The notes under the pieces were generated by a model. The model was not told where the DNA came from and ran no database searches. It saw only the letters and a list, made by a program, of their open reading frames with translations. Of a stretch of 64,000 nucleotides of DNA, positions 3,891 to 44,842 are shown piece by piece. A program made the translations under genes and the position numbers. Within the stretch, counting starts at the first letter, position 1. Each line of letters starts with the position of its first letter. The stretch lies in contig JAWQFM010000001.1 of NCBI GenBank assembly GCA_033442325.1, positions 288,374 through 352,373 on the forward strand. The letters run 5' to 3'. This DNA comes from Salpingoeca rosetta. Its lineage: Eukaryota > Protista > Choanoflagellata.

Positions 3891-6676
3891 TACCTCCCTT
3901 CTCTCTTTCTCTTTTGCGAACTGCAGCGCAGCCCCTACCTTCTTCAGGTGGGAGTCGGAGTGGCTCCACTTCGCATGCAGCGTCTTCTTGAAGGCCTTTT
4001 CTTCCTCCGCGTGATATTTGGCCAACACCTTTGTCATCACAGCCGCCACAGAGTCCTAGTATCACAGACACACAGACACACAGACACGCAAACACAGAAA
4101 CGCACACACGCACACACGCACACACACGCACACACGCAGACAGACAGACACACACACACGGTGTGAGGACAACAGGAAGCGATGGGCATGCACAGTGTCA
4201 AAGTCGTCATCGCAATGGCCAACAGACACGATGATGCCAAGATTTCACACACACACACACAATGCATCATACGTGGTGCTTGCTGGAGAGGGCGTAGCAA
4301 CACGTCTTCAGGTGGTGCACGTGGAGATCGTGCACGCCTTGGTGGAACTCCAGCTCAAGTTGCAGCAGCTGCTTGAACCCATCCTCCAGCAGCTAACAGA
4401 GCACAGCGTAGCGAAGAGCAAACACAACGTCAGCAAGTCAATGTGGGTGCGCGGTGCGTGCCTTGTTGTACGGTTGGAAGTTGTGAATTCAATGAGGTTG
4501 AAGCCGCACAACAAGTGTCTCACATCAAGGCAATGGCGGGTGCAGGGGAGAAGGTCACGAACCTTCTTGAACTCTGGCGTTTGCTCGCCATCCTTGTTGG
4601 CCTTGCGCAAGGCCTTCAGCTGCTTGCACAACTGCTTGTGCGTCTTCTGCACGCGCGCTTTCGCGTTTCTGATATGGGAGAAAGGGGCATGGGGAACAGG
4701 GTTACACACAGGGACGCGCATCACACACAATCAAAACTGTAGAAACCACGAAGGCAGACAGGCGCAACGGCAGATAAACAAAGAAGAAGGCTACTGCCAG
4801 GAACACACCCACATACACAGAGGAAGACAGACAGACATACACACACAGGCACACACACAGAGACATGCAGAGCAGCAGCAGAAGCAATGCAATGGAGCAC
4901 TGACTTTTCAACGTCTGCGCATTTCTTCCCGCGCTCTTTCTGCCGCTTGGCGACGGCCTTCTCATATGACGCTGGATGAAGTGATGACAAAGCCGACCGC
5001 AGAATGAGGGCGCAGTCGCGGAACAATTCACGTACCAACACGCACACAGACTCCAAACGCGTTCAGCACCGCGCACATTACAACAGGCACGATTGCACAC
5101 GCGATCCTTATGATCACACAGCACACACACACACACACACGCACACGCACACACACATACATACACACACATATACATACACACACACACACACACACAC
5201 GTACGCACCTTTCAGCTGAAGGACTTGCTTGTGCTGCGCCAGCTGTGCTGTTCGCTCTTGCAACGACTTGTGCATGTCGCGAATGTGCTCAGCAAGATCC
5301 CGCTCAAACCTGAAAGCGGTAAGGGGGTGAAATATTTTTGGGTACAGTCGAGTGCGTGAGTGGTCGCACCGCTGCTGTGCGTGACTGAACAGTGAGAACG
5401 TTCCGCGATCGAAGAAAAGGAAGACAAAGGGCAAGGGACAAAGCGAGCTTTTTAAGGTGCGCGGGACGGGGTTGGAACAGAAGTGCAAACGTACGAGTCG
5501 GCGAGCTCTTGAATCCTCAGCCTTGTGGTGCTACCGCCCTCTGTTATCAACAAACAAAACGAAAGGCAGTGCAATTTGGTGCCAGGACATGAGCCGTGGT
5601 ACGGCAGCACACACAAGCACAGAGACAGCCAGACGAACGCGCAAGCAGAGACAGCCAGACGCACACACACAACCGCATGGACAGGCGTAGGCGTACGTGG
5701 CATGACGGTGGACTTTCGGAGAATGGCTGGGGACTTGTCACCGCCGTTTGTGGCGGCACTGATGCTGAGTGACCCGAGCACATCGTTGTTTTCCTCTTCC
5801 TCGCCCTCATCTGCAGCGAGAAGCTCAGACATCTCCATCAGGTTCCGCTCAGAGGGCTTGCATGCATCCTGGGCGAGGCGTGTTGGTGTGAGAGGTGTGT
5901 GCAGTGAGTGAGTGAATGAGAGAGTGTGTATGGGTGAGTGAGTGAGCAAGTGCGTGCGTAAATGAGTGCGTATGTGTGTGGATGCGAAGCCTCACGGACA
6001 GAGCGCACAGCAAAGCAAGACAGCAAGAACACCCGTGAGGATCGACTTGGTGGGATTATTAACACACGTACAAGCGGGTTGACGAGGATATCCGCAAAGT
6101 CTGCGTGCTCTGAGAGCGCAAAGATGCTGATGTCAATCTTGGTGAAGATGGACGTGAGACGTGTCACTCCGTTCTATCAGTGTCAAGCATTGGCGGTTTG
6201 CTCGTGAGCGACACAAATACAACAAAACAAGAGGTGTGAAGTAACAATAACTGAACACACAGGCATACAGACAGGAACAAAGAGGCAGAGAGACAGACAC
6301 TCGCAGACACAGACAGCCAGACAGACAGACACAGATACACACAGACACAGACACACAGACACACACAGACTTCACACGCACACACTCGCAGACAGGCAGA
6401 CACATAGACACATACACACACACCCGCAGAGGAATGTAGCGGAATCCTGAGCGGAGGGAGGTGAGGGGAATGACGTCCCAGCCAATGCAGTCGCCGTCAC
6501 GGCTGTCAAAGACAGCGAAGCGCACAAGCACGAGACTCGGCAGCACGAGGCGCTGTGCACTGATGGTGCAGAGAGATCACGAGCGAGAAGTAGGGACGGG
6601 GTTGTTTGTGGAGTCAGAGGAAAGGGTGTAAACGGCAAGCAAATACACATACACCCACAGACACAGACAGATAGAC

Positions 6677-6715
<39 letters not shown>

Positions 6716-7356
6716 TACGCACGTGAATTCGTTGTCTGCGCGCCACCGCGGGTTGAAGCCGCGACCGCGACAGGCGCGTGTCTTGAACTGCAACTTCTTG
6801 CTGTCTGCAGGAATGCCGAAGAACTGGACCTGCAGTGGTGGCGGAAGTAGAAGGACAGCGACAGCGCAGCGTGAGAGGAGCGTAAGTGACAGGTAGTGAA
6901 GAGGGAGAGAGAAATGTGTGTACGTGTGTGAGTGTGAGTGACAAACGGGTTGGGTTGTTGTACGTGTACAGCAGGACTGCTATGGAGCAGCACTGCCATT
7001 GCCTCGTGCACAGTGCCATGCAGTGAGCATGTGGCACGCGCGTTGACGCACCTCCACATATGGGCTGCCGCTCTTTCTGGCAACGCCGTAAACAGAGAGA
7101 ACCTTCACGCTGACGTTGAGGGGCACAACATCGTCGATGGGGAGCCGGTTGAACGGGTTGTACGTCTTGGACGGCTCAGTGTACAGCGCTGGCTTCAGCA
7201 GAAACCCGGTGCGAGCATTGTCCTCAAACTTGCCAAAATTCAGCTGGGGGTTGGTTGAAAGGGGTGGTGACATCGCTGCGTGAGTTTCTGTTGAGTGGGC
7301 GTGAGGGCATACGCGAGACAGAGGGCGCACATGTGTGTGCAAAGGACACCGGCAAG

Positions 7357-7434
<78 letters not shown>

Positions 7435-9913
7435 CTGCATGGGCATGTCGTTTGTTTGCCAATTGAGAGCGACGAGCTGGCAGCCAACATTCCAGAACGC
7501 CTTTCGTGTTCACGCAAATACACAACACAGCACGCACAGTGGTTCGATTAGACGCACGAACACACCACGGAAGCGGAGGCATTGCGCATGTATGTCGGTG
7601 TTCGTCTGTTGTCGTGGGTGTGTGCTTGCGTGCTGAAAGAAGAGCAACATTGGGGCAATGGCCCGCCGTTTCTTGCCTGGGGGTTGAAGTTGGTGGAGTT
7701 GATGCGGGTGCCCTGAGGATAGATGCGTGACAGCTGCATCTTGTTGTAGTCAACAAACTCCTGTTGGCCGGGAAGGCCAGGCACGCAGGCGCAAGCAGAC
7801 GGGGAGGGGATGAATAAACTGATACGTGCGCGTAGCACTTCGGGGAGCAGTGAGAAGAGGTGTCCAACAAAACAGCGTAGCACGCAGCTGGCGTATGTAT
7901 ACATGTGTCTGTGTGCATGCGTGTCTGTGTGCATGCGTGTCTGTGTGCATGCGTGTCTGTGTGCATGCGGCACTCACCTCTGGTTTACCGGTGACGAGGC
8001 GAAGCGCTTTCTTCTCGGAGAAGGACGAGATGTGGTAGCAGTTGTTGTTGGCCCGCGCCACGTCAAAGTTCTGGACGACCAGCAACACAGATGGCGGGAA
8101 GGAAATGTCCCAACACGCGCGGTGAGCCATGAAGTGCGCATGCAAGAGACACGGCAGCATCAACACACATAAACAAACAGGCACACACACACACACAAAA
8201 CAAGCAAACAACAATCAATCAAACAGGCACACACAAAAACAAACAAACAAACACACACACACACACACAAACAAACAAACAAACAAACAAACAAACAAAC
8301 AAACAAACAAACAAACAAACAAACAATCAAACAAACAATCAAACAAACAATCAAACAGACACAGACACACACACACACACACACACGGATCCACACACGG
8401 ATCCACCGGACCGCACCGAGAAGTGATATGGGGTGCAGTAGTTGACGAGGTCTGACAGCTCCTTTGCAATCTCCCCGGAGCGTTCCTTGATACGTTTGAT
8501 TTCTTCCTCGTCGTCCTCAATCACTTCGCCGTCAATGATGAGCTGGACACACCGTGCAGTGCACACATGCAAACGCGTGTGAGCAGATATGAGCGAGCAT
8601 GGTTAAGTTCAATTGAGCGCGCACGGATTGGCGTGAGCACAGGTGTGTGGACGAGGGAATGGAATGTGGGCGTGGGCCCAGTTTGTAGTCAGCACCTGAC
8701 ATCACAGCCTGCGATGTACAGGCGTGAGCGCGTACCTCGCGGTTGTACGCCTTCGCTGTCTCGGCCTCGTTGGGGTGCATGTCCGCTTCATCTGAAAAAC
8801 ACAACAGGGAATAAATCAACACACAGAACCACCCATGCGTGGACCGTGAGTGAATCAGCAGGGTTGCACGCTCTTGTGCATTTGCAAACGCAACACAACA
8901 TGTAAACAACAACAACAACAACAACTTAAACAACAACAACAACAACAAAAACAACAACTTAAACAACTTAAACAACAACAACAACAACCACAACAACAAC
9001 CACAACAACAACAATACTGACGTGAGCCGTCATCTCGCTGCTTGCGCTTCTTGTTCTTGATGATGATCTTGTACTTGAGCGCCTCGGGGCTCGGCAGCTG
9101 GTTTGGAAGTGTTTCATACCCATCGCCCTCCATAAACTCCCTGCATATATACGCACGTGTGCGTGTGCAAGTTTGCAAGAAGGCGTGAACAGGGAAGGCC
9201 AGGAAGAGGGGGAGGGGAGAGCAAGGCACAAAGGGTGGATACAAACAAGCGACAAGTTGCGTGTAGCAGTTGTTCTGAGCGCACTTTTGAAGGAGATCTC
9301 CGAAAGTTGCTTTGCAATATGCAGCCATCTTTCGCATCTGTGGAGGACTGTAGAGGAAGAGCAGGAGTGTGTGTGTTGTGTGCGTTGGCATGTGTGAGAT
9401 CAGGAATCACAGCAGCCGCTTGTGTGAGTTGCGTAGACGCCATTAAATGTGCAAATATTTGTGTGTATGTGCAGGTATTGTATACGTGTGTGTGTGAGTT
9501 GGTAGCGGACCTGCAATGGTTTTCGAAGCTGAGGATGACGGGGAAGGGGTTGTTGACAAAGGCAAAGTCAGCAATGGCCTGGATCACACCCTTGAATGGC
9601 ACGCGCGTGCACATGGTGTGGCCGTGCGTCACCTCCGGCTCGCCGTCCTGCCCGTCCCAGATGTCGACTTCAACGCACCTAACAGCGGCGTCAGGGGCGT
9701 CGGGGAGTGAGGTGTGGAGGCAAAGTGGAAGCACAGATTGCAACACACACACACACACACACCATACGCACACATCACACACACACACACACACAACACA
9801 CACAGGTACACACACACACACACCATACACGCACATCACACGCACACACACACAGGTACACACACACACACACCATACGCACACATCACACACACACACA
9901 CCATACGCACACA

Positions 9914-9965
<52 letters not shown>

Positions 9966-12410
9966 ACCATACACGCACATCACACGCACACACACACACA
10001 GGTACACACACACACACGCACAGACCTGCATCCTGCAAGGAGGCACTGGCGGTAGACTTCGAAGGTCGACTTGGACTGCCACTGCCCACCAGTGAGGTAG
10101 GTGTTGTGGGAGGAGTTGATAAAGTAGTGGGCAAGCGGGCGCGTCATGTCGTGATACACAGACGCGTGGCGTGACTCACGCGCCCAGCCATATTGCAGGT
10201 TGTCCATCAGGAAGTCGTTGAGAGCACGCAGTGAGATGACCTCATTTGCACTGCAACACGAGCACGTTGGGGTTGTTTTGCAAAGAGGGAGGAGGTTTGA
10301 AGCATGGGTTAGGTGCAAGCCGTGTATAGTTCACGAACGTGCACACGTGCGCGCAACTAACACCCAGGCAATCCTCCACGCAAGGCAAACACGAACCACC
10401 ACACATAACGTCCCACGCCACAGCAGGGCATCAACCCACTCCTCCTCCTCCTGCTCTTCCTCTGTCGCGCCCACAGACCGGTTCTCCTGGCTGGGCTCGT
10501 ATTCGTCGATAATCTCGATGCAGTCCTCGCGCGTCGGCAGCGGCGACAGCACCTCGTTCAGGCGCGGGTCGCGCTGGTCCTGGTGGTGGTGATGGTGGTA
10601 ATGGTGATGGTGGTGATGGTTGGTCGTGGCGGTAGTGCGCATATTGTATGAGGTGTAGAACACCAGGCAAACACCCAGCATGGCAAAGCAAAACGGCCAA
10701 GTACACAGATGTACTAGTGCACCGTGCAGGGACAACAGAGTGCGTGCATGCACGAGCGCTGCGTACTTGTGAGAGGAACGACTGAAGCTTCTGCAGGGGC
10801 ATGGTCGCATCAAGATCAACGGTATCACCGTCGTCGGAATCGGCGAGGTCGCACAGCGCATACTTGAGATCCTCCCGCACATACACGCGGCCAAGGAAGT
10901 CCTGAGCGAACGTGTGCGTGACGGGTGGTGGGTGATGGGTGGTGGTTGGTTGACCATGCGAGGGAGAGAGTGTATGTGTGTATGTGTGTGTGTGCGTGTG
11001 TGTGTGTGTGAAGTTGGAACAATGTGAACTGAGCGTGCGTACATCGCATCTGTGTGCGCTCGCAAAGCGTGAGCTGAAGCACGTGCATGGGGTACAACGA
11101 AACGTCGTGCACTGCACTGCACGGCACAGGTTAGCGCAGGAGACAACGATGTGGGCGCACCTGGTAGCGCTGGAAGGTGAGCTCCGCTGCATCGAAACGA
11201 CCGTCGCCATCCACGTCAACACCGTTGGCCTCCAACATCGCCATCGCCTGCTGCTTCGTGTCCTTGGACACGGAGTTCACCAGGCTGTGCATGGGGAGCA
11301 GCGGTGGGTGCATCGTGGGTGTCACGATCAAGAGTTAGTGCGTGTTTATATTCGCGTTTGTGCGTGCATGAAGAGGCATTCTGCCTGTGTGGATCTGTGC
11401 AAGGCAGTCTTGTCGTGTTGTCGTGTTGAGTCTGTGTGAGAGAGAGTGTGTGTGGTGTGGTGCGGTGTGTGTGTGTGTGTGTGTTGTATGTGTATGTATG
11501 TGTATGTGTGTGCGTGTGTGCGTGTGTCTTTGAAGATGGACAAATGGCAGGAACGGACTTACTCTGATACGGCAAGGCGGCCCTTTCGCGCCTGGGCAGC
11601 GCACTCCGCATACATCCACCGCTGTTGGTCCTGCAGGCAGCACAATCATCATCATCATTGTCACGGTGTTGGTGGTGGCACTGTTGAGGCTACGCGACAG
11701 ACATGCAGTGACACGCCATGCAGTCATACACAGGAGTCTGCTCGCGCACACATGTGCACGTGAGGGCAGAAGCATTTGTATATGGGGAAGGTGGCAGCAA
11801 ACCTTGATGGTGACGGGACGCGGTGAGTTCCAAGTGTTCTGCGACACCAAGCGATGCAGGCCAACGCGCCAGATCTTGGGATGGTGGTGGTCGTTGTCGT
11901 GGTGAGGAGTGTGATTGAACACAAGCAGGGGGGGGATGGAAGCGGGAGCGCAAAGAAGGTGTGAGGCGTGAAGACCTGCACACAAAAAGAGAGGCACAGA
12001 CACATGTACACTCACGCACACACAAACAGACAGATACAGACACAGACACAGACACAGACACAGACACAGACACAGACACAGACACACAGACACACACGCA
12101 CGCACGCACACACACAGACATAATAGACACACACACACACACCAACCTGGGCTGTCTTCTCGCTCTTGGCGATGAGGCTGAGGTAGTGGACATTGACAAG
12201 ATCACGCGTTCCCTTGTAGAAGGCGATGCACAGGAAGAGGGGCAGCTCCTCATCCTTGACCGTGCCCGTCTGCCCACAACAGAGAGCAGTATGTGCGTAC
12301 GTGAGTGTGGCTGTTGGAGGTGCGTGTCGGCATGTCCAACGGAGGTGCGCTGAGGGTCGATCGCACACACAAGCAAGGACATGCATGGACACGAACACGA
12401 ACACGCGCGA

Positions 12411-12445
<35 letters not shown>

Positions 12446-13027
12446 GGCACACACACACACACACCACAACACACCAACACACACAAACTCACAGCCTCGT
12501 CGGTGAACGGGTTGCTGCGGATGTCCGAGATCTGCTCGATTGGCAGGTACCGCTGTAAACGACGACGCATCATGTGTCAGGTATTGTGACGATCAACATG
12601 CGGGGAACGATAGGACAGATGGAGCGAGCAATGGCTGGCACATGGGGACAGTGAGGCGTCACCGTGGTTCATACACTCAGGCACACACACACACACACAC
12701 ACTCTCTCTCTCTCACACACACACACACGCACTTTTTCCTCTGTTGAGTAGTCTGTGAGAATGAGGCCGCACTCGGACTGGTCCAGTTTGATCTGGTGCT
12801 TCACGCGGTACTTGGGCGGCTTCCAGGATATGCAGGCCTGCTCGGCGTCAGCCAGCACGCAGAGGGTGGTGAGCCAGGGCAGTGCGGACCTTGTGCAACA
12901 AGCACCACACAGTGCGACGAACGGGCGGAGGCAAGGAAGGGCACGTAAAGGAGTTCAACATAGACACCCACACACAGACACACAGATACAGACACACAGA
13001 GACACACAGAGACACAGACACACAGAG

Positions 13028-13059
<32 letters not shown>

Positions 13060-13667
13060 AGACACAGACACACACACAGACACAGACACACACAGACACA
13101 GACACACATACACACACACACCCACGAATTGTAGTCCAACTGAACCTAGGCATGTAGCGAGTTGATAAACAGAGAAGAGCGGAGTGGGGGATTTCTGGTC
13201 ACCTTTGACTCTGCACTTCGGACTAGACCCTACCCGCGTCATTCCATCAAATTGGTAGCATCTGTGTTGTGGCGCATTACACAACTCTTACACATTTTCT
13301 GTCATCTCGTATTAGCAAGGGAACATGAACCCTTCCGTAGTAACTCTCCCCCTAGAGAGTCGTGACATTACGAGCGTCTAGAGGCGCTGTTTCGCACTCC
13401 TGACGAGTGGCTGTAGTCTGCACCACCAGAGACACAGACACACAGAGACACAGACACACACACACAGACACAGACACACACACACACAGACACACAGAGA
13501 CACAGACACACACACACATACACACACAGACACACACACACACACAACACCTCTTCAAAGACGAAGAAGAGGTCATCCTTCTTGATGGTGTCCACACACT
13601 CCTCTGGAGTGAGAGGGGCAGCAAAGTGTTTCGAGTGCATCTTACAGCCCCACTGCAAGTTGGACAT
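2627..13667 (-). CDS. PLCB: Phosphoinositide phospholipase C, beta-type (PH, EF-hands, X, Y, C2, C-terminal coiled coil); about 30 exons
   Basis: X box: '[24 protein letters not shown]' (~10080-10150), '[18 protein letters not shown]', '[10 protein letters not shown]' (9510-9677) and '[17 protein letters not shown]'. Y box: 'ELSDLVNYC', 'SSFSE', '[19 protein letters not shown]' and '[16 protein letters not shown]'. C2: 'FAVFD...[11 protein letters not shown]'. Beta-type hallmarks: '[11 protein letters not shown]', the proximal CTD '[12 protein letters not shown]' (~6074-6130) and helical K/E-rich exons from 5300 to 2627. ATG 13667, TGA 2627-2629. Confidence 0.93.
13398..13417 (-). other. Predicted 20-nt micro-exon of the PLC gene (TTATRQE)
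   Basis: Exon 1 ends in phase 0 (GAG|gtgttg) but the next clear exon starts in phase 2. The segment tgcag|ACTACAGCCACTCGTCAGGA|gtgcga reconciles the phases. An alternative donor 2 nt downstream in exon 1 would also work. Confidence 0.5.
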
Positions 13668-14113
13668 GCTGCGATCACACACGCACACAGCGAAGCCCAG
13701 CCAGCCCCCGCAGGCGTCGTCTGCTCAAGGTCAGCAAAGCAAGGCAACTGGAAGAGGTGTGTGAGGGTGAGGGTGGGTGTGGCAGTGTTCGTTGTGAAGT
13801 GCGTGGATGGAGGAGCGAATTTCAGCGCCGTTGTTGTTGTGCTCTCCTTTTTTTTTTTTGTTGCCTTGACCTGACATGCATGCTGCATGCAACAATCACA
13901 CACCGTGCTTGCTTGCTTGCTTGTCAGCACGTGTGTGCGTGTATTCGTCAACTATGAGATCAACGACACTCCCCGACGATGTACACCACAGACACACACA
14001 CAGACACACACACACACAGACACACAGAGTCTATTAACGTAAATTAACACTTGTTGCGCAGAAACCGCCACATCCCACGTCACATCCCGTGACAGGCACG
14101 TCATGTCAACACA

Positions 14114-14799
14114 TCACAGCGCCTGCAAGACACGTTCTGCGGTGCCGCTGGCGTCTAACAGCACAACGTGCTCGTCTAGCGCAGCCTCCTCCATCGCTAC
14201 AGCAGCGTCAACATCATCAGCAGGAGCGTGTGTTGTTGTTGTCCTCATGCCTTGCGTCGCCGCAGTCTCGTCGACGTGGTGTGATCCGTCTTGCAGGTGC
14301 CACCCGAACATGCGCGCCACAGCCTCCAGGTCGAGGTCTTGTTCGTCGTCGTTGTCCTGTGAGCGCGATGACAATGGCAGCGGCGTTATTGTGGTTCACA
14401 CAGCAGCGCATACGCTCGGTAGTAGTACATAACAAAAAGAAACACACACACACACACAGTGGGGCACGCGCATCATTGAAAGCATATAGACACACGCACA
14501 CACGCACACACACACACACACCATCATTGAAAGCATAGTCACACGCACACACACACAAGCATCAACCTGCGAGGAAGTGTCTCCATCAGCGCCAATGATG
14601 GTGTCGTAACCGGGGCGGTACTCAACACCATACACAACCGTGGACCTGTGGGTTGCGTGCACATGCAGTTAGTTGTAGCGGGCGAAAAACTGAGCTGACC
14701 AATATCCATTGAAAACCCAGTGTCACACGTGGCAAGACAGAGAACACACACACAAAACAGAGAGACAGGCGGACGCAATACGAAACCCCCACCTCCCCC

Positions 14800-35693: not shown

Positions 35694-36303
35694 CTGTTGG
35701 TGGTGGGTGAGAACGTGCTGTGGGAGAAGAGGAGGCCGAGAACTGAGTTCGCACGCAGGCACTTGACATCAACGGCCTTGTTGTTGCTGTGGCTGCTGTT
35801 GGTGATGGCGAGCTTCCTTTTGCAACTGTTTGGTTAGATTGGATGATATGACACGCAATGTACACAGAGATGCGTCGCAATAAACAATCCTTCATGTCAA
35901 ACACCACACATCCTCACGCTCTGACAACAACAGCACGCATCGACACTAGTGTTCTTGCACGCAAAACGCCCAGCAAGCAAGCAACAAACCCAAAATCAGG
36001 GTGGTGGCCACGCCCCTTTTGTGGTTGTCAGTGGTTTGTGTGTTTTGCGTGCGGTCCCAACACCCTCGCACGCGATCGACACTTTCACGCCCAGCCACTC
36101 AAGCACACCAAACGTTGTTTTGGGTGGAATCGGCTTACTACTTACTTTGACTGCTTCTCACGCAAGCGCAGGCGGTCTGACCAGTCAATCGCTGTGGTGT
36201 TCCTGATCACCACCCAGACAGACAGGCACCTGACCTTCTTCACCAGCACCGGCACCAGTGCAACAAGCAAGCAGCCGCCACCGAGACCGGCACCACCGGC
36301 GAG

Positions 36304-39300
36304 ATGGCTCTGTTTGGTGGCGCCAGCCAGGGTGCTGGGCGCACTGCGCTGTGCAACGGCGACTTTGTGTCGCTGTTTGTGGAGGAGCTCAAGGGCTTCG
36401 CCAGCGTGGACATTCTGTCGACGCGCGAGGTCACCGTGTACCAGGGCGACACGGACTCCGCGTTTGATGGCAGCACAAGCACCAAGTCATCCTCGGAGAC
36501 CGCGACCGCGCCCAACTTTGAGCAGTCGTGCGTCTTCCAGATCAAGGCGGTCACCGATCTGCCGGAGGGCGCCAGCCTCAAGTACGGTGATGTCGTGCGC
36601 ATCATCCACCGCAGCACCCAGCGCAGCATGACGCGCCAGAACCGCGCCGTCAACGGCAAGCACGCCGTGGCGCTGGAGAACACGGACCGTGCCGCCGCGC
36701 ACTTCCGCCTCCTCCCGCGCTTCAAGATCCGCTCCGTCGGCGAGCCCGTGCTGCTCAACGACCAGGTCATCTTCCAGAACGAGGTGGTCATCGAGGGCAA
36801 CCGCACGTACCTGATGACGGACCGGCCAGAGGACTCGCCCAAGGTCCTCATGGAGTGCGGCTCAAGCAAGACCACGGGCATCCGCGTGCGCCTGTTTGCG
36901 GCCTACAACGTCTCCAGCAAGGCCTTTGTCCACGTCCTCAAGGGCGGCGACTTTGTGCGCCTGTTCCACCACGAGGCCAACGGGTTCCTTGTCGTTGCGC
37001 GCCACATTGGCACGGGCGATGCGCACGACTTCCTCGGCCGCGACAACACCGTGTGCCTGCGCACCTTGGCCGTCGGCCGCAGCCCGGACGAGTACCACGA
37101 CGCAAGCTCCATCTGGCAGGTGGAGCTCGAGGACACCCAGCGCCGCGGCGGCAGGCCCGTGCTGTGGACGGACCGCGTGCGCCTGAAGAACGTCCTCACC
37201 AACGAGTTCCTGGATGTGCGCACCACGTCGTCCACGGGGGCCATGGCGCCCACGGCAGACAAGGGCAGCTCCAACCTCTTCTCCTTTGTGCAGTCGACGC
37301 ACTCCGCGCAGGAGGGCGACGCGCCCGCCACGGCGCTGCTGTCGCGCCAGGAGGACCTGCGCATCCCCTACCACACGTTCTTCTTCCTGCGCGGCAGCGG
37401 CAACCCGGAGGTGACGGACCAGTTCCTGCACGTGGACTCGGAGCACTACGCCGTGGAGGAGGACGAGGAAGGCGACGACACCGGGCAGAGCAGCACGTTT
37501 GCGCAGACGGTGCTCATTGCCACGCACGACGAGGACGCCTTCTCGCTGCAGTCCGTGCACCAGCAGGACATTCGCGACTTCTACTACGCGCTCGGCCACG
37601 TCAAGGTGCTCACGCGCCTGGCAGCAGACGACGTGCTGACAGACGTCACCAACCCCGTGCACGCGGACCTGTACAAGCGCGCGCGCCGCAGCATCCACGC
37701 GCTCATCCAGTTCTGCTCGGAGGACAAGATTGAGGATGATGAGGACGTGGTGGGCCGCGCCAACACCCTGCACCAGAACATCCTCTTTGACCTGCAGGTG
37801 CAGGTGCCGCTCATGAAGGTGGTCAGCCTTCCCTTCCACGGCGCACACTGCGCAGAGTGGGGCAAGGGGTGGCGGGAGCGCCTGACACAGACACAGTACC
37901 GCCACTACAACAAGCTCGCCCGCGACGTGTACCGCCTCATCAGCTACCTGTGCCGGGAGAACGTGCACATTGGGCTCATGTTTGCCAACGCGCACCTGAC
38001 GGCCATGATCAACCAGTGCCGGCTGATTGGCTACCTGGACGGCATCAACTGGGACATTGCCGACGCCATTGACGAGATGTTTAAGGACAACACCATCCTG
38101 CTCAACCGCGTCACGAAGCAGTCGATTGAGACATACCTCTCCCTCATCCACGAGGCGCACACCACCACCGCTCTCGAGCAGTACCTGCGCCTCCTCGCCG
38201 CCCTGTGCTCTGTCGACGGTGAGGCCATCACCTCCACCCAAGCCAGCATCCGCGACCTCATGCTTGTTCCTGGCGCGCCGTCAGCGGACGTTCTGCCCTC
38301 CATCGCCAACGGTCCCAGCGGCATGCGCATCACCGCGCGTGTGCTCACCCCTGGCAAGCCCTTCCGCGCATGGAGCACCGTGACCCTCCCCTTACAGGAG
38401 TACCTGAAGGACCACGACAACCTCGAGTACTTTGACGCCACGCTGGAGCTGTTTGCCCAGCTGTGCCTGGAGGGCAACTGCCAGGGCGAGCTGCGCGCGG
38501 CGGCCCGCACGCCCTTCCCCATGATCATGGGCGCCCTCAAGTCGCAGCTGCCGCCGCACGTCAAGGCGCGCTTCTGCACGCTCCTCGTCAACCTGTACAT
38601 CGACGGCGACGACCTGCCGGACGTGGACCACTCCAACCGGCGCTGGCAGGACCTGGCCAACCACAAGTCGCACGCAAAGCTCAAGACTGCGGCGGTGCAG
38701 CTGTTTGACGTGGACGAGGTGGTGAACTGGGTGGAGGCGTACCTGTCGCAGAACGGCCTGCTCACCTACAACCACGAGTACCACAGCGCAGCCAACAGCA
38801 AGAAGCCCGAGATGATCGCCCTCAAGCAGGACGAGCTGCACCGCAACATGCTCACGGAGCAGGTGGTGCACGTTGCGCTTGCCCTGGTGAACAAGGGCCT
38901 GTACTGGGACGCCGGCAGCAGGAAGCGGCTGGTGCGGCTGCTGCTCACGCTGCTCGTGCGTACGCACCCGGGCGAGAACGATGACCTGAGCGCAACATCG
39001 TCGCTGGACGTGGTCATGCAGGCCAAGACGCTGGTGTGCCGCGCCCTCGGCGCGTGCATGGACGCGAACCTGGACGAGGTGGTGACGGAGCTGCTCACGG
39101 CGTTCAAGAAGGAGTATTTGGCGCACAAGCACAAGCACATTGAGGCGCACGCGGACGACCGTGCCCTGCACGAGGTCAGCCTCATCCAGCACAACGGCGA
39201 TCACCGCCACTTCTTCGAGACGGACGGCCTGTCGCAGCAGCAGATTGTGCACCTGCTGCTGGCGCTGACAACCTACCCGAGCGACGGGCTGCGGGTCGCG

Positions 39301-42300
39301 GCGCTCAATCTCCTGCTGCGCTGCTTCAACGTCAAGGGCTCCGTGCTGGCCCGCCTGTCGGATGTCGTCGTCATTGCAGACAGCAAGGACGAGGCTGCCC
39401 TGGAGAAGCTGGAGCAGCTGCTGCTGACGCTCAAGCACGAGGACCATGACGACCTGCACACTGCGGCCGCGCACATGACTGAAGAGATTGAGTGGATGTG
39501 CTCGCAGTGCATCACCGTCAACGGCACGCTGGCAGCCGACCTGCTGGCCCCCGGGGACAGCAGCAGCAGCAGCAGTAAGGCGGGGAGGAGGAAGCGGAAG
39601 GGCGTGAGTGGCCCACGTCTGCCGTGGCGCAAGCCCGGTGTGAGTATTGAGCCGCACCATGCGCACCAGGAGATGATGCGCAACGCCAACGCGCACAAGG
39701 CCGTACTGCACATCCTTCACCACCACCTCTCTGGCGCCGACCTCAAGACGGCGCTCAAGGACGACCGAGCGCGGGATCTGTTTGCCGCGTGTTTTGAATT
39801 CCTCGCCTTCTTCTGCCTGCACAACAAGCACAACCAGGAGCTGCTTGGGCACGCGCACGACATCTCGTTCTTCGTGCACGCGTGCTCGTACGGCATCCAC
39901 GCAGAGAAGGTGCTGCACCGTATTCTGGAGGGCGAGCCCGACCTGGTGCAGGAGCACGTGGTGGACGAAGGCAAGGTGGACCGCCTCATTGCAGACCTGA
40001 TCAAGGAGCCGCGCTGTCGCAACGTCGACTTCCTCAAGCTGATGGAGGTGATTGTTGCGCCCACGGGCACGCCCTCGCGGGAGCTACAGGACCTGGTGGG
40101 CGAACATTTCCTGCAGGCAGAGGAGAAGAGCCATCTCTTTGAGCACGAGCTTGGTTCCTCCCACTTCATCTCGTTCATCGTGTCCACCTACACCAAGACC
40201 GGTGGTCGTGGTGATGACGAAGATGATAATGGCACCAGCGCACAGCCGCTCTCCGCCCGCGAGCATGATCTCCGCGATTTCTTTGAGCAGCTGCTGTCAT
40301 TCTATGCGGTGACAGCGCACGGGAACCAGGGCACCGCAGCCCATGTTGCCAAGCACGTGCCGCTCGCTGAACTTGCACAGCCCTTCATTGACGGCGTCAC
40401 ACTCCCAACCGCCACAAAGGTGCTTATGTGTGTGTATTTCGTGTATTTCGTGTGTGTGTGTGTGTGCGTGTGTTTGTGGTGAGGATTTGTGTCTTATGTG
40501 TGTATTTCGTGTGCATCTGTGATAATGCCCTGTTCTGAAATGTTGCAGCTCCGTTCATGTTCACTTTGACACTGTGTGCTCGCCGTGTTTCATTCTTGCA
40601 TGTGTATGCCTTCACTCTCAGACTCACATTTCTTTCCTTCCACGCACACGCACAAACACACGCACACATGCACGCACAAATACACATACACACATACACG
40701 CACGCACGCACGCACGCACAAACACATACACACGCACGCACGCACAAACACACATACACACACATGCACGCACAAATACACATGCACACACACCGCCAGT
40801 CTCGCCTGCTGACGCTGATCCGAGATGTGTACCTGCTGCACGGCACGGACGAGGATGGCGATGGTGTTGTCGACGATGTTGATGCTGAGGATTTTGGATT
40901 CGTGTCTGCCGCAGCCAAGCAGGAGACGTGCGTGAGACTCTGTGGACCCCTGGCCAACGAGCTGCGGGCCATCGACAAGGGGTGGAAGCACAAGCCAAGC
41001 AAGGTCCGGGCAGCGCTCGACCGGTATGCGTTTATGACGCTGCTGCCGCTCGCTGCTGACCTGCTGCGCATCTTCGTGGAAGAGCACGGCAGCGTGCCGG
41101 CGGAGAGGCTTGAGGAAGAGGCTGTGTCGCTTGTTGCGGAGTGCGTGCGCTTCCTGAAGCACCGGCGAACGGTCACGTTTGAGAGCCCGCACTACCTGAT
41201 GGACCACGAGTACCGCGTGCTGGGTGGACATGTCACTGGCGAGCTGCTCAAGAGCACGCTGCTGGCACAGCAGGACGCGCTGCTGGTGAATGTGCAGACG
41301 GAGCACACGTGGTACGACGAGACGGAGGCGAAGGAGGCGCGAACGGCAGCAGCACGCTCCACCGCGCTCAGCATGGGCAGCAAGCACGGGTCGAGCAAGC
41401 GGCACGCGTTCTCAATCGACTCGTTTGCAGCCACGCACAGCAAGCGCGGCGGTGGCGGGCACACCCGCGGCGGTGGCAAGGCGCCACGCAAGGTGATGCC
41501 TGTGGAGAAGGTGAAGACAGAAGGCGAGCGCATCCAAGAGGAGCTGCCGTTCTTCGTTGATCAAGTGCGAGAGACATTCAACCACGGCTTCTCGCAGCCG
41601 CACCTGCCGTGGATGTCGTTTCTCTCCACGGAGTACAACTTCCAGCCGTTCTGGGCGCTGGTGGGTATTCTGCAGGCCGACTTGCTGGAGGACAGGCTGC
41701 ACGAGGAAGAGAAGGAGGCCGAGGAGGCGGCACAGGGCGGCATGCTGGGTGCTGATGGCGAGCGCAGTGGCGTGCAGTCGCGACAAGGCAGTCGACCAGA
41801 GCTACAGCGCACCACGACAGCAGCAGCTGCTGCGCGGTCGGGGACATTCCGGAGCCTGCGCAATCGCCGCCGGTCGCGTGTGCACGGGGAGTCGATGCAG
41901 ATGAACCCGATCAACCTGGTGGACGTCAACGTCGACATCAACATCCGCACGTGCCTGGAGAATGTGATGACGCACTTCGAGGAAGCTGGCGATCACGAGC
42001 ACCACCATCACGAGTTTGAGGAAGAGGACGAGGAAGAGGCAATTGTGGGCTTCCTCGCAGCCATGTCGTGTGCGCTGACGTGTGTCGTTGATCCCAAGAC
42101 GGGTCGCGTGTACCAGGAGCTTGACGATGAGGACAACGAGGAAGCCAAAGCAGCCCACGAGGCTGCCATTGCCACCGTTGGGCGCTCCCTCAACAGCCTT
42201 GGTCTCCCCGACATGGTTTTGTTCCTGCTCAGCTCCAACCACAGGTGCACGGTGCTCATGGCGGCGCAGCTTGGCTGGCTCATGCTGGATGCCACGCCGC

Positions 42301-44842
42301 ACGTGTTTGAGGCAAAGGCCGCGGCTGCGCTGATGGAGAGCAGCATTGAGGGCGGCAGCACGCTCGCCCGCCGGCAGCACCAGCAGCAGCAGGAGCGGCT
42401 GCTGTCGCAGTGGGCGTTCCACGATGCGTTTGAGAGCGGACCAATGGGCCGGCGCGCCCTTGCCGCCATCCAGCGCCATCTGCAGCACATGCAGGAGCTG
42501 CTGTTCAAGCGGGAGCACGAGGACCCGCTTGACCGGCTGCGTCGCGACCAGGACGTGGAGAACCTCGACGTCGCCATTGTGATCCGCATCCTCGGATTCC
42601 TGGAGGCGCTGTGCTTTGGGTGCTTCACGGAGATGCAGCAGCTGCTGCGNNNNNNNNNNNNNNNNNNNNNNNNNNNNNNNNNNNNNNNNNNNNNNNNNNN
42701 NNNNNNNNNNNNNNNNNNNNNNNNNNNNNNNNNNNNNNNNNNNNNNNNNCCCCTCTTATCATCATCCCACCCACCCCCGCCCCCCCCCCACAACCCCCCA
42801 CTCGCCCCTGTCAACAATTTCAGGTGCACGAGCCGATTCTGCTGTTCCTGCGCTATCTGAACGCGTCGGACGACAGCGAGGACATTCCAGACAAGGATGT
42901 GTTCCACTCGCTCACGCTGTATGTGCTTGAGGCGGCTGCATCCCTGAGCATCTGGTGCGAGTCGTACGGCGTGGTGGACAACGGGCACGGCGACTGGGTG
43001 CAGCAGGACGGCTACGATGTGGATGTGGACACAGAGCACATGCATGCGCTCGTGAAGAGCTTTGACCTGTGCAACGCGCTGGATGTGATTGACGAGTGCT
43101 GCGAGGCATCCATCCTCTTCCTCCTGCTCGGCGTGCTCGAGGGCCGGCGGGAGGGCGACGTGGTGCTGGACATGCTGTGCGCTGCGTTGTTCCCGGAGCC
43201 GTACCTCACCCGCGACGCGCACTTCACCCAGAGCGCGTTCTTCCGCCTCCTTGACGGGCACTCTGCTGCCGCGGAGAGCGACGCCAACATGCACGTGCGA
43301 GAGGCGGCCCTGCAGCGCGTGGCTGCGTCACCACACACGGCGCACTTCTTCGACCACGACGTTGCGCTGCTGTACTACACGGTGCTGCGGATTCTTGGCG
43401 AGCAGGCCGAGAACTACTGCATTCGCGTGACGCACTTGCTCAACACGTGGGAGCAGCACTCCCCGCACAGCCACAACGCGCGCGACAGCGTTGGCCGGAT
43501 TGAGTTGTTGCGTGATGGCGAGCTGCAGCCCGTGTACTTCCAGGTGCCCGCTGTTGTGCACGACACGAAGGACAAGCTGCAGGTGCGACAGCTGCGCACG
43601 CAGATGATCAATGGCACGGTGCTGGAGAACCCGGAGCAGAAGATGCAGTCGTTCTTTGGCAGCGTCGACTTTCTCATGAACGTGATGAACTTTGAGGCGC
43701 GCGTGGCCCGCATGGGGGTGTCGTATGTGCTTGGCCACCAGCGGTTTCTGCTGCCATTGGCGTTTATCCTCGCCGCCATCATCAACATCTGGGTCATCTT
43801 TGACCTGGGCGACGATGGGTTCCCGCACAGCGTTGTGCGGGTGCTGGCGATTGCGCATGCTGTTGTCAGCATGCTGATTCTGCTTGGGCAGTCGCTGTCC
43901 CCGCTGTACGTTGACTGGCAGCGGTGGCAGGAGGCGGCAGAGGGGCGCTCGCTCCTTGGAAAGGCGCTGGCCTTCCCGCTGTTCTGGAGCCTGCAGGCAT
44001 CGTACCCGTACTACGTGGTGTACCTTGCCATGAGCGTTGCCGGCATCTTCCAGTTCAAGCTGTTCTGCTTCCACCTGTTTGACCTGGTGCTGCGGGTGGA
44101 GGTGATGAACCTCGTGCTACGCGCCGTCAAGCAGAACGTCTCCAAACTCCTGGGCACCTTCCTGCTCACCTTCTTCATCATCTACGCGTTTATGCTTGTG
44201 GGCCGCGATGCGTTTGGTGGCACGTACGACTTTGCGGACGCCCCGGCCACGTGTGCGCCGGGCACGCCACTGGTGCAGTGCCTGCGCGACCATCTGTACT
44301 ACGGCTTCTACTCGTCGCCCGTGTTTGCGCCCGCGGATGCGGATGTGGGCCTGTTTGTGTACTCGCTGCTGTACTTTATGGTGGTGGTGCTGGTGATGGC
44401 TGCGATTGTTTCCGGTATCATCATTGACTCGTTTGGCGAGTACCGTGCCGAGACGGAGGCCATCGCTGCGGAGAAGGAGAGCCGGTGCTTTGTGTGCAAC
44501 TTCAGCCACGACCGCATCCAGGCTGCACACAAGGGCGGCTTTGAGGCGCATATTGCGAGCGACCACAACGTGTGGAACTACATCTGGTTCCTTATGCGCG
44601 TGCTGGAGAAGCGAGAGGAGCACAAGCCGCTGACGGGCGTGGAGATTGAGGCTGTGCGGCACTGGGACACGAGCAAGGACCTGACGGCAATGATGCCCGT
44701 GAACCGCGCGCTGTGCTTGGAGGCGGCGAGCGAGGACGTCACCCTGGACCAAGTCCTGGACGTGGTGAAACAAGTGGCCATAACAGCCGAGCGGTCTCTG
44801 CAGCTTCTCCTTGCATCTGCGGCTGTTCCCGCCTCCTCCTGA
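36304..44842 (+). CDS. IP3 receptor / ryanodine receptor superfamily Ca2+-release-channel-like protein (~2,700 aa), divergent
   Basis: Suppressor/MIR region: 'LCNGDFVSL', 'LKYGDVVRIIH', 'FRLLPRFKIRSVGEPV', 'LKGGDFVRLFHHE' and 'SIWQVE'. RIH/ARM region. RIH-associated 'ILGFLEALCFGC...MQQLLR' and 'VGRIELLRDGELQPVYFQVP'. Six TMs, S6 'AIVSGIIIDSFGEYR' and a zinc finger 'CFVC...H....HNVWNY'. Exons 36304-40419, 40800-(gap at 42650) and 42824-44842. Confidence 0.92.
42650..42749. other. Assembly gap (100 N) inside the IP3R-like gene
   Basis: N run interrupts the RIH-associated coding region. Confidence 1.

What the first reader, a model, noticed from the sequence alone, without database searches (positions are those of the whole stretch)
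44279..44450. IP3R/RyR-family channel that has lost the universal GGG(V/I)GD selectivity filter
Seen: the pore region reads 'CLRDHLYYGFYSSPVFAPADAD' between an intact S5 and S6. Established: IP3Rs have GLRSGGGVGD and RyRs have GVRAGGGIGD here, and that motif forms the filter. Here only the first Gly aligns. The rest of the gene is open over ~2,700 codons with strong GC3 bias, and the S6/zinc-finger region is intact, so it does not look like a pseudogene. S6 'AIVSGIIIDSFGEYR' is closer to RyR (AIIQGLIIDAFGELR), whereas size and C-tail are IP3R-like. Inference: a distinct subfamily with altered permeation, or a non-conducting regulatory subunit.
Basis: partly seen in the sequence, partly recalled or inferred. 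Interest (0 to 1): 0.85.

Follow-up and report, generated by a model that had tools for sequence, protein, structure and literature searches.

The report
Choanoflagellate IP3R/RyR-like channel, alternative pore loop
A large, expressed and selectively constrained calcium-release-channel-like gene of the choanoflagellate Salpingoeca rosetta really lacks the classic GGGxGD pore filter. Its substitute loop is a conserved motif shared with many protist relatives, so it looks like a distinct channel type rather than a broken gene.

Summary
The window is Salpingoeca rosetta scaffold GL832980.1. The gene at 36304-44842 (+) has three exons, one 100-N assembly gap and about 2,749 codons. It encodes an IP3R/RyR-superfamily protein whose P-loop reads CLRDHLYYGFYSSPVFAPADAD, with S-P-V-F-A-P where RyR and IP3R have G-G-G-(I/V)-G-D.

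RNA-seq reads show this sequence without variants. A 96-98% identical dispersed paralogue gives dN/dS 0.17. Complete transcripts from two other choanoflagellates keep the loop, and it is the best-conserved 15-mer of the channel domain.

"Universal filter lost" is too strong. Among the 141 closest channel domains, 52 from at least five eukaryotic supergroups carry H-L-D-Y-G-F-R-S-A-P-V-W-type loops. They also share the window's filter-to-S6 spacing of 31 residues, against 38-39 in RyR and IP3R.

Trees separate the two pore types (SH-aLRT 89-98). An AU test cannot exclude a sister relation to RyRs, so the placement is unresolved.

The protein also lacks six of the IP3-contacting residues and both Ca2+-sensor glutamates. 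It keeps the S6 hinge and gate and the zinc finger.

Best reading: a conducting tetrameric cation channel with a different filter and an unknown gating ligand. Conduction and permeation remain inferred.

Interest is moderate to high. It is a new variant of a known kind.

The parts
36304..44842 (+). Whole gene: IP3R/RyR-superfamily channel, GenBank model P0156 ('cardiac ryanodine receptor', S. rosetta, scaffold GL832980.1). True length is about 2,749 codons.
   Evidence: ORFs and translations; tblastn of P0156; locus identity 100%; Pfam Ins145_P3_rec, MIR, RIH
36304..40419 (+). Exon 1 (1,372 codons): N-terminal beta-trefoil/MIR, RIH and armadillo regions. The IP3-binding-core-like part lacks R504, K508, R511, Y567, R568 and K569 equivalents (T, N, F, N, V, H).
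40420..40799 (+). Intron 1 (GT...AG, 380 nt), rich in GT/CA microsatellite; 92% identical in the paralogue
   Evidence: sequence; protein models join ...TATK|SRLL...
40800..42649 (+). Exon 2, visible part; it runs into the assembly gap
42615..42617 (+). Phe codon in 'FLEALCFGCF' at the position of the Ca2+-sensor Glu (RyR1 E3893 in 'FLQLLCEGHN')
   Evidence: alignment A1 and profile alignment to RyR chains
42650..42749 (.). 100-N assembly gap. It hides about 265 nt of exon 2 (about 88 codons, including the second Ca2+-sensor position) and part of intron 2.
   Evidence: paralogue L001 11992-12448; RNA loose end at 42822
42750..42823 (+). 3' end of intron 2 with its AG acceptor
   Evidence: RNA depth about 11 against about 190 in the exon; 105 reads in run X21 and 41 in run X22 join an upstream exon here
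42824..44842 (+). Exon 3 (672 codons plus stop): end of the armadillo region, S1-S6 channel domain and C-terminal domain
44147..44206 (+). S5 transmembrane helix (LLGTFLLTFFIIYAFMLVG...)
   Evidence: alignment to RyR2 S5; helix 177-202 of the AF2 model
44270..44305 (+). Pore helix (LVQCLRDHLYYG)
   Evidence: helix 221-231 of the AF2 model, pLDDT about 95
44315..44332 (+). S-P-V-F-A-P, the six residues that stand where GGG(I/V)GD stands in RyR/IP3R
   Evidence: MAFFT alignment and column profiles; no variant letters in RNA reads
44333..44344 (+). Short luminal linker A-D-A-D (two acidic residues). Spacing from filter to S6 hinge is 31 residues, against 38-39 in RyR/IP3R.
44345..44446 (+). S6 helix with hinge Gly, gate Ile and Asp (…AIVSGIIIDSFGEYR)
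   Evidence: I271, D273, F275 invariant; G269 and R279 nearly invariant
44486..44566 (+). C2H2 zinc finger of the C-terminal domain (CFVC...HIASDH)
   Evidence: C293, C296, H314, H319 invariant in 64 sequences

Best explanation
The gene encodes a functional, expressed member of the IP3R/RyR superfamily. It belongs, by pore-loop motif and loop length, to a widespread non-GGG pore type with consensus H-L-D-Y-G-F-R-S-A-P-V-W, found in choanoflagellates, CRuMs, Rhodelphis, dinoflagellates, ciliates, Rhizaria and Provora. The channel most likely still assembles as a tetramer. It most likely opens through the conserved S6 hinge and Ile gate and conducts cations through a filter built from the S-P-V-F segment. 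That segment would contribute backbone carbonyls and Ser hydroxyls, with the aromatic residue packing like RyR Ile4897, followed by a shorter luminal mouth carrying two Asp. The IP3-contacting basic residues and both Ca2+-sensor glutamates are missing, so it is probably gated neither by IP3 nor through the canonical cytosolic Ca2+ site, and its activator is unknown. Shown here: sequence, expression, splicing, purifying selection, conservation of the loop, fold, and absence of the ligand residues. Inferred: tetramer formation, conduction, ion preference and gating.
For: Superfamily membership and fold: Pfam hits, PDB sequence hits, AF2 channel-domain model with pLDDT 92.8 matching RyR1-3 and IP3R1/3 transmembrane domains at TMq 0.6-0.69. 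Not a pseudogene: NG86 dN/dS is 0.17 against the dispersed paralogue L001 (42 nonsynonymous and 75 synonymous changes, 2,294 codons, binomial p 2e-20; channel domain 0.17, p 0.002). Expression: stranded RNA-seq depth is 100-780 over exon 3, the intron is spliced out, there are no variant letters in 44279-44344, and spliced contigs in two other runs match this copy with 1-2 differences. Orthologues: complete transcripts of S. kvevrii (2,675 aa) and S. urceolata (2,677 aa) carry CLRDHLYYGFMG(P/S)PVF, and Mylnosiga fluctuans carries CLRDSLYYGYQSSPLF. LRDHLYYGFYSSPVF is the most conserved 15-mer of the channel domain (12/15 three-way identity against 30% overall). Alternative pore type: 52 of 141 rows have x-P-(V/I)-(W/F), with Gly 100%, His 78%, Tyr 76% and Trp/Phe 89%. 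Filter-to-hinge spacing is 31 in 8 of the 9 window-clade rows (the ninth has 34). The xPx mode is 31, the GGG mode 39, RyR 38 and IP3R 39. Trees without the loop columns split the two types at SH-aLRT 89 and 93, and at 98 with the loop columns included. Gate intact: I271, D273, F275 and the zinc-finger C/C/H/H are invariant. Ligand sites absent.
Against: No electrophysiology or structure exists for any xPx-type channel that I could find, so conduction is inference. The AU test does not reject a clade of the window lineage plus RyRs (p 0.19 on 198 columns). On 683 columns the constrained tree is even 0.9 lnL better (p 0.52). The xPx affinity therefore rests mainly on the loop motif, the loop length and modestly higher loop-masked similarity (median 96.7 against 89.7 bits, p 0.003, in a sample biased toward the query). 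The choanoflagellate loop departs from the xPx consensus at two well-kept positions (Asp to Tyr, Arg to Tyr or Met). The nearest sister sequences (P0004-P0007) have yet another loop (TFGERAVF). The acidic residue equivalent to RyR D4899 is absent. This copy is the minor transcript (about 12% and about 1% of reads in the two raw-read runs).
Confidence: 0.55

Rival explanations
1. Secondary replacement in a holozoan IP3R-B/RyR-related lineage. The choanoflagellate clade descends from a GGG-bearing ancestor shared with RyRs, the 'IP3R-B' that cannot bind IP3. It later remodelled its filter, converging on an xPx-like loop and short linker.
For: The AU tests do not reject window clade plus RyR. S6 and the pore helix (H..Y.G) resemble RyR, and the channel domain scores best on RyR chains. 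A citing paper summarises IP3R-B as an IP3R-like channel that cannot bind IP3 and is related to the origin of RyR (PMC9113742), which fits the missing IP3 residues.
Against: It requires convergence in both motif (S-x-P-V-F after Y-G-F) and an 8-residue shortening to exactly the xPx modal spacing. Free trees place the clade on the xPx side. The best non-choanoflagellate hits are all non-GGG proteins from distant protists. Both lineages are long branches, so their attraction may be artefactual.
Confidence: 0.3
2. Non-conducting or regulatory subunit. The protein keeps the scaffold but no longer forms an ion path of its own. It acts as a modulatory partner in heteromers or as a scaffold or receptor on endomembranes.
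For: It has lost the canonical filter, the D4899-equivalent acidic residue, the IP3 site and both Ca2+-sensor glutamates. S. rosetta also has canonical IP3R-like and RyR-like genes (supplement of PMC7399828) that could supply conduction.
Against: The pore helix and loop are the most conserved stretch among orthologues. The S6 hinge, hydrophobic gate, cytosolic acidic residues and zinc finger are invariant. The same loop type is conserved across supergroups, which is unexpected for a dead pore. Identity to canonical IP3R/RyR channel domains is only about 20-25%, which makes co-assembly unlikely (inference).
Confidence: 0.12
3. Decaying duplicate or assembly artefact. The unusual loop reflects a pseudogenising copy or mis-assembled sequence.
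For: The gene contains an N gap. Its paralogue has two N gaps flanked by single-base indels. This copy is the minor transcript.
Against: dN/dS is 0.17. Long open exons are present in both copies. RNA reads confirm the loop at depth 85-410 with no variants and no indels. An identical loop is present in the paralogue, and a near-identical one in three other species.
Confidence: 0.03

Closest known systems
Ryanodine receptors (metazoan RyR1-3)
   Same: Channel-domain fold, pore-helix H..Y.G pattern, S6 'G-x-I-I-D-x-F-G-E-x-R', C2H2 zinc finger and T-G-x-E in the C-terminal domain. RyRs give the best PDB sequence matches for the channel domain.
   Different: About 2,749 aa rather than about 5,000. 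No SPRY or RyR-repeat domains. S-P-V-F-A-P instead of G-G-G-I-G-D. Luminal linker 7-8 residues shorter. Ca2+-sensor E3893 and E3967 replaced by F and A.
IP3 receptors (IP3R-A, metazoan IP3R1-3)
   Same: Size and domain order: Ins145_P3_rec, MIR, RIH, armadillo, 6-TM, C-terminal domain. The N-terminus matches only IP3R structures.
   Different: R504, K508, R511, Y567, R568 and K569 equivalents are T, N, F, N, V and H. No GGGVGD. Ca2+-sensor glutamates absent.
IP3R-B family (Alzayady et al. 2015, Mol Biol Evol 32:2236; known to me only through citing papers and memory)
   Same: IP3R-like architecture, inability to bind IP3, and affinity to RyR in some analyses (PMC9113742; AU tests).
   Different: I could not read the paper or obtain Capsaspora IP3R-B, so orthology and the state of its filter are unknown. 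This gene is absent from the one list of S. rosetta ITPR/RyR homologues that I could read.
Paramecium Ca2+-release channels CRC-III, -V and -VI
   Same: Protist IP3R/RyR relatives whose filter region departs from GGG(V/I)GD; for CRC-VI there is 'practically no similarity' (PMC3213138). Ciliate sequences are among the xPx group here (Muranothrix, Protocruzia).
   Different: Those are shorter, often lack RIH domains, and have been localised to trafficking organelles. Whether they carry the same xPx motif was not checked against their sequences.

Membership tests
IP3R/RyR superfamily | N-terminal Ins145_P3_rec/MIR beta-trefoils and RIH domains | tested here: met
   Pfam: RYDR_ITPR 2.7e-31, MIR 6e-9, Ins145_P3_rec 7e-6; RIH_assoc precomputed for the gene models
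IP3R/RyR superfamily | C-terminal 6-TM channel domain with the RyR/IP3R fold, S6 G-x-I-I-D-x-F motif and C2H2 zinc finger | tested here: met
   phmmer to RyR2 8e-26 and IP3R2 2e-21; AF2 pLDDT 92.8; Foldseek probability 1.0, TMq 0.6-0.69 to RyR1-3 and IP3R1/3; invariant I, D, F, C, C, H, H
IP3R/RyR superfamily | GGG(V/I)GD selectivity filter | tested here: not met
   S-P-V-F-A-P at the aligned positions, confirmed in RNA. The feature is not universal in the superfamily (PMC3213138; 72 of 141 rows lack it).
IP3-gated IP3R (IP3R-A) | IP3-coordinating residues R265, T266, T267, G268, R269, R504, K508, R511, Y567, R568, K569 (rat IP3R1 numbering; the residue list is from my knowledge) | tested here: not met
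   The alignment to IP3R1 keeps R265 and T266 (L-R-T) but gives T, N, F, N, V, H at 504, 508, 511, 567, 568, 569. This stretch of the alignment has low confidence (domain score 9 bits).
Ryanodine receptor | SPRY domains, RyR repeats, about 5,000 residues | tested here: not met
   No SPRY or RyR_repeat Pfam hit in any of the three pieces; about 2,749 codons
Ryanodine receptor / Ca2+-activated IP3R | Cytosolic Ca2+ activation site (RyR1 E3893, E3967, T5001) | tested here: not met
   E3893 is replaced by F in this copy (42615-42617). E3967 is replaced by A in the paralogue; this position lies in the N gap here. The T-G-x-E of the C-terminal domain is kept. Orthologues P0002 and P0003 keep the second Glu but not the first.
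xPx pore type (defined here) | H-L-(D)-Y-G-(F/L)-(R)-(S/G)-(A/P/S)-P-(V/I)-(W/F) after the pore-helix Cys | tested here: met
   Window H-L-Y-Y-G-F-Y-S-S-P-V-F matches 10 of 12 positions and differs at Asp and Arg
xPx pore type (defined here) | Short filter-to-S6-hinge spacing (mode 31 residues, against 38-39) | tested here: met
   31 in 8 of the 9 window-clade rows (the ninth has 34); xPx mode 31; GGG mode 39, minimum 33
xPx pore type (defined here) | Phylogenetic grouping independent of the loop | tested here: inconclusive
   Split SH-aLRT 89 and 93 without loop columns, but the AU test does not reject window clade plus RyR (p 0.19 and 0.52)
IP3R-B (Alzayady 2015) | Orthology to Capsaspora CO.IP3R-B in a holozoan phylogeny | not testable with these tools
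   Paper not held. The Capsaspora sequence could not be fetched by accession.

The most novel reading that the evidence does not exclude
The IP3R/RyR superfamily has a second, ancient, pan-eukaryotic pore architecture: an x-P-V-W loop with a short luminal linker. It has not been described as such. In choanoflagellates, the closest relatives of animals, it is carried by multi-copy, expressed giant channels that have neither an IP3 site nor the canonical Ca2+ sensor. That would make them an orphan-ligand intracellular channel class with novel permeation, apparently absent from animals.
Probability: 0.35. Interest if true: 0.8.

Novelty: new variant of a known kind. Interest (0 to 1): 0.6.

Why it matters
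IP3Rs and RyRs are the two textbook intracellular Ca2+-release channels, and their GGGxGD filter is usually treated as a family signature. This work shows a conserved alternative loop across many eukaryotic lineages. In a genetically tractable choanoflagellate it comes together with loss of both known activating-ligand sites. That points to an unexplored channel type whose ion selectivity, gating ligand and organelle are unknown. It also bears on how the Ca2+ toolkit of the animal ancestor was composed and what animals lost. In practice, the GenBank name 'cardiac ryanodine receptor' and the truncated gene models (2,479 and 2,637 aa) are misleading.

Tried and rejected
1. Single-sequence PDB search of the region upstream of the channel domain found nothing. 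A profile (A1) was needed.

2. Word-indexed protein searches were nearly blind. They returned 5 and 11 hits for whole-protein queries and none for the 410-aa domain, because of the length window. They gave no further choanoflagellate orthologues, and that blank says little.

3. Alzayady 2015 and Cai 2015 could not be read. Accession searches found no paper mentioning this gene.

4. Full-length MAFFT of 50 proteins timed out twice. I used the C-terminal ~1,060 residues instead.

5. The ESM Atlas feature search gave only generic Ion_trans/RyR clusters.

6. I first took HMMER's 5-residue gap as a deletion of GGGIG. The multiple alignment shows a same-length replacement, with the shortening further downstream.

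7. I first concluded an 'ancient clade' from quick trees. The AU tests forced me to downgrade that to unresolved.

8. Pseudogene and assembly-artefact readings were rejected.

Full report
**Identity of the locus**

The window is Salpingoeca rosetta scaffold GL832980.1. Locus L002, fetched through the GenBank protein model P0156, is 100% identical to window 30304-50842 except for the N run. The gene on the + strand starts at 36304 and stops at 44842.

Reading the DNA with the protein models gives this structure:
- Exon 1 is 36304-40419.
- A GT-AG intron full of GT/CA microsatellite lies at 40420-40799.
- Exon 2 starts at 40800 and runs into a 100-N assembly gap at 42650-42749.
- The tail of intron 2 is 42750-42823.
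- Exon 3 is 42824-44842.

The paralogue and RNA reads show that about 265 nt of exon 2 are hidden in the gap. The real protein therefore has about 2,749 residues. The deposited models (2,637 aa here, 2,479 aa for the paralogue) are truncated around gaps.

The translation reads PLVQCLRDHLYYGFYSSPVFAPADADVGLFVYSLLYFMVVVLVMAAIVSGIIIDSFGEYR, and the Cys codon is at 44279. Pfam finds Ins145_P3_rec, MIR and RIH domains.

Against all PDB chains, the channel domain matches RyR2 at E 8e-26 and IP3R1-3 at E 1e-21 to 1e-19. The pore helix, S6 and the zinc finger are aligned, and GGGIG is left unmatched. In a 141-sequence MAFFT alignment, G-F-Y-S-S-P-V-F-A-P stands opposite G-V-R-A-G-G-G-I-G-D. So the six filter residues are replaced by S-P-V-F-A-P, and the loop is shortened further downstream.

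An AlphaFold2 model of the last 410 residues, built from a 64-sequence alignment, has mean pLDDT 92.8. The pore helix covers residues 221-231 and S6 covers 246-291. The model matches RyR1-3 and IP3R1/3 transmembrane domains with Foldseek probability 1.0 and TMq 0.6-0.69.

**The gene is alive**

S. rosetta carries a dispersed paralogue on GL832971.1 (L001, protein P0001). It is 96-98.6% identical from 74 nt upstream of the ATG to about 60 nt before the stop, introns included, and the flanking genes are unrelated.

Nei-Gojobori counts over 2,294 shared codons give 75 synonymous and 42 nonsynonymous differences. That is dS 0.047 and dN/dS 0.17, with binomial p 2e-20 against neutrality. For the channel domain alone dN/dS is 0.17 (p 0.002). 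Single-base indels in L001 sit only next to its own N runs and are not seen in RNA, so they are assembly errors.

Two raw RNA-seq runs (X21, X22) are more than 98% on one strand. They cover exon 3 at depth 100-780 and drop to about 10 in the intron tail. Reads join position 42823/42824 to an upstream exon (105 reads in X21, 41 in X22) whose sequence is present in L001. No alternative letter or indel reaches 10% anywhere in 44279-44344.

Diagnostic sites show that most reads come from the paralogue. This copy contributes about 12% in X21 and about 1% in X22. However, spliced contigs in two other runs (X1, X3) match this copy with only 1-2 differences where the paralogue has 20.

Loose ends and three further variant sites reveal a third expressed copy (…ECLK-DHLYYGFYSSPVF-GSEASTWEFAYALI-YFMVVV…). 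It is in neither locus.

**Orthologues keep the loop**

An exhaustive HMMER search of 1.84 billion representatives returned 2,748 relatives. The closest are complete transcripts of Salpingoeca kvevrii (2,675 aa) and S. urceolata (2,677 aa), at 37-38% identity. They carry CLRDHLYYGFMGPPVF and CLRDHLYYGFMGSPVF. A Mylnosiga fluctuans fragment carries CLRDSLYYGYQSSPLF.

In the three-way alignment the channel domain is 30% identical overall. LRDHLYYGFYSSPVF is its most conserved 15-mer, at 12 of 15 positions, ahead of S6.

**The filter is not universal**

The Paramecium CRC paper already reports that only 3 of 34 channels have the full GGG(V/I)GD and that CRC-VI shows practically no similarity there (PMC3213138).

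In my set of 141 channel domains:
- 69 have x-G-G-(I/V)-(G)-(D).
- 52 have x-P-(V/I)-(W/F), with a well-conserved context of H 78%, L 48%, D 76%, Y 76%, G 100%, F/L 81%, R 65%, P 100% and W/F 89%.
- 20 have other loops.

Named members of the second type come from Diphylleia (CRuMs), Rhodelphis, Polarella and Symbiodinium (dinoflagellates), Paulinella (Rhizaria), Ancoracysta (Provora), and Muranothrix and Protocruzia (ciliates). The window's loop matches 10 of the 12 consensus positions. It differs at Asp (Tyr here) and at Arg (Tyr here, Met in the orthologues).

An independent indel character agrees. The distance from the second filter position to the S6 hinge Gly is 31 residues in 8 of the 9 window-clade rows (the ninth has 34). 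The mode is 31 in the xPx type and 39 in the GGG type (minimum 33). RyRs have 38 and an IP3R has 39.

**Phylogeny is suggestive but not decisive**

With loop columns included, one branch (SH-aLRT 98) separates all GGG-type rows from all xPx rows. With the loop columns removed, the corresponding branch has 89 on 198 columns and 93 on 683 columns of the C-terminal ~1,060 residues. RyRs sit inside the GGG side.

The AU test, however, does not reject a clade of the window lineage plus RyRs. On 198 columns the difference is 28 lnL (p 0.19). On 683 columns the constrained tree is 0.9 lnL better than the quick free tree (p 0.52). Both lineages are long branches.

Loop-masked similarity favours xPx proteins only modestly (median 96.7 against 89.7 bits, p 0.003), and the sample was chosen by similarity to the query.

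I therefore treat 'inherited xPx pore' as the better-supported reading, at about two to one. 'Secondary replacement in a RyR/IP3R-B-like holozoan lineage' is the main rival. The root is unknown, so neither pore type can be called ancestral.

**Other functional sites**

A profile of the armadillo region aligns FLEALCFGCF with RyR FLQLLCEGHN and TLGAFVGGPN with TLTEYIQGPC. The offsets place these at RyR1 E3893 and E3967, the two Ca2+-sensor glutamates (the residue roles are from my knowledge of RyR1 structures).

The first is Phe in this copy (42615-42617). In the close kin it is Asp (P0002), Ala (P0003) or Met (P0004, P0005). The second is Ala in the S. rosetta paralogue, and in this copy it lies in the N gap. 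The kin keep Glu at the second position. A Diphylleia xPx protein keeps LCEGH, so this loss is specific to the window's subclade.

Alignment of the N-terminus to IP3R1 keeps L-R-T (R265, T266). It puts T, N, F, N, V, H at R504, K508, R511, Y567, R568 and K569 (in a weakly scoring stretch). This agrees with two earlier first-stage notes on the same window.

The S6 hinge Gly, the gate Ile, Asp, Phe, the Glu/Arg after S6, the C2H2 zinc finger and the T-G-x-E of the C-terminal domain are all retained. They are invariant or nearly so across 64 sequences.

**How it most likely works**

Shown here: a correctly folded, expressed, constrained IP3R/RyR-type protein with intact gate hardware, a strongly conserved alternative P-loop, and no canonical IP3 or Ca2+ activation residues.

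Inferred: it forms homotetramers among its own paralogues. It conducts cations through a filter made by the Ser-Ser-Pro-Val segment, with the Phe/Trp taking the packing role of RyR Ile4897 and with two Asp in a shorter luminal mouth. Without the D4899-type ring, its divalent selectivity and conductance probably differ from RyR and IP3R. The gating stimulus is unknown.

A non-conducting or regulatory role is less likely, because the pore loop is the best-conserved part of the channel domain. Only recordings can settle this.

**Comparison with the literature**

No paper in the searchable library mentions this gene's accessions. The one readable list of S. rosetta ITPR/RyR homologues gives four other genes and omits this one and its paralogue (PMC7399828 supplement). 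The reviews read treat GGGxGD as the family's filter (PMC3194816, PMC7399828). The exception is the Paramecium work.

The concept of an IP3R-like channel that cannot bind IP3 (IP3R-B, Alzayady 2015) exists. I could not read that paper, so I cannot say whether this gene was included or whether its pore was discussed.

**Verdict**

It is a new variant of a known kind. Interest is 0.6.

Noticed in passing
window 44288-44449 (reads only; the locus is not in the window or in L001): A third expressed paralogue. RNA reads match the window in the pore helix/filter and S6 but diverge between them (…PVF-GSEASTWEFAYALI-YFMVVV…) and upstream (…SNHSMIECLK-DHLYYG…). They carry T>C at 44377 and 44425 and C>T at 44449, in roughly 25-40% of reads at the first two sites in run X21. 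The copy is not found in the annotated proteins searched.
   Followed up: partly
L001 (GL832971.1) 5927-14492 against window 36230-44781: Gene-sized dispersed duplication, introns included, 96-98.6% identical with unrelated flanks. The two copies differ strongly in expression: the paralogue supplies about 86-99% of reads, and this copy about 12% in X21 and about 1% in X22.
   Followed up: partly
L001 6576-6786 and 13631-13730; window 42650-42749: All three N gaps fall inside these duplicated genes. L001 sequence next to its gaps carries runs of single-base indels that RNA reads do not show, so they are assembly errors. GenBank models were built around them and are truncated or mis-spliced (2,479 and 2,637 aa against about 2,749).
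   Followed up: yes
window 43207: C in the assembly, but T in about 88-99% of RNA reads and in both contigs that otherwise match this copy. This is probably a reference error, a strain difference or a small gene-conversion patch.
   Followed up: no
window 41740-42006 against L001 11011-11349: A stretch of about 90 codons in exon 2 (a Ser/Arg/Gly-rich linker) is unalignable between the two otherwise near-identical paralogues. Exon 2 has the highest dN/dS (0.29).
   Followed up: no
proteins P0004-P0007 (metagenome contigs, taxa unknown): The sister group of the choanoflagellate clade has yet another loop, C-(F/L)-R-D-H-(V/I/L)-x-T-F-G-(E/D)-R-x-x-F. It is one residue shorter in the pore helix and has no Pro. 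One member is named 'ankyrin repeat protein' by its source.
   Followed up: no
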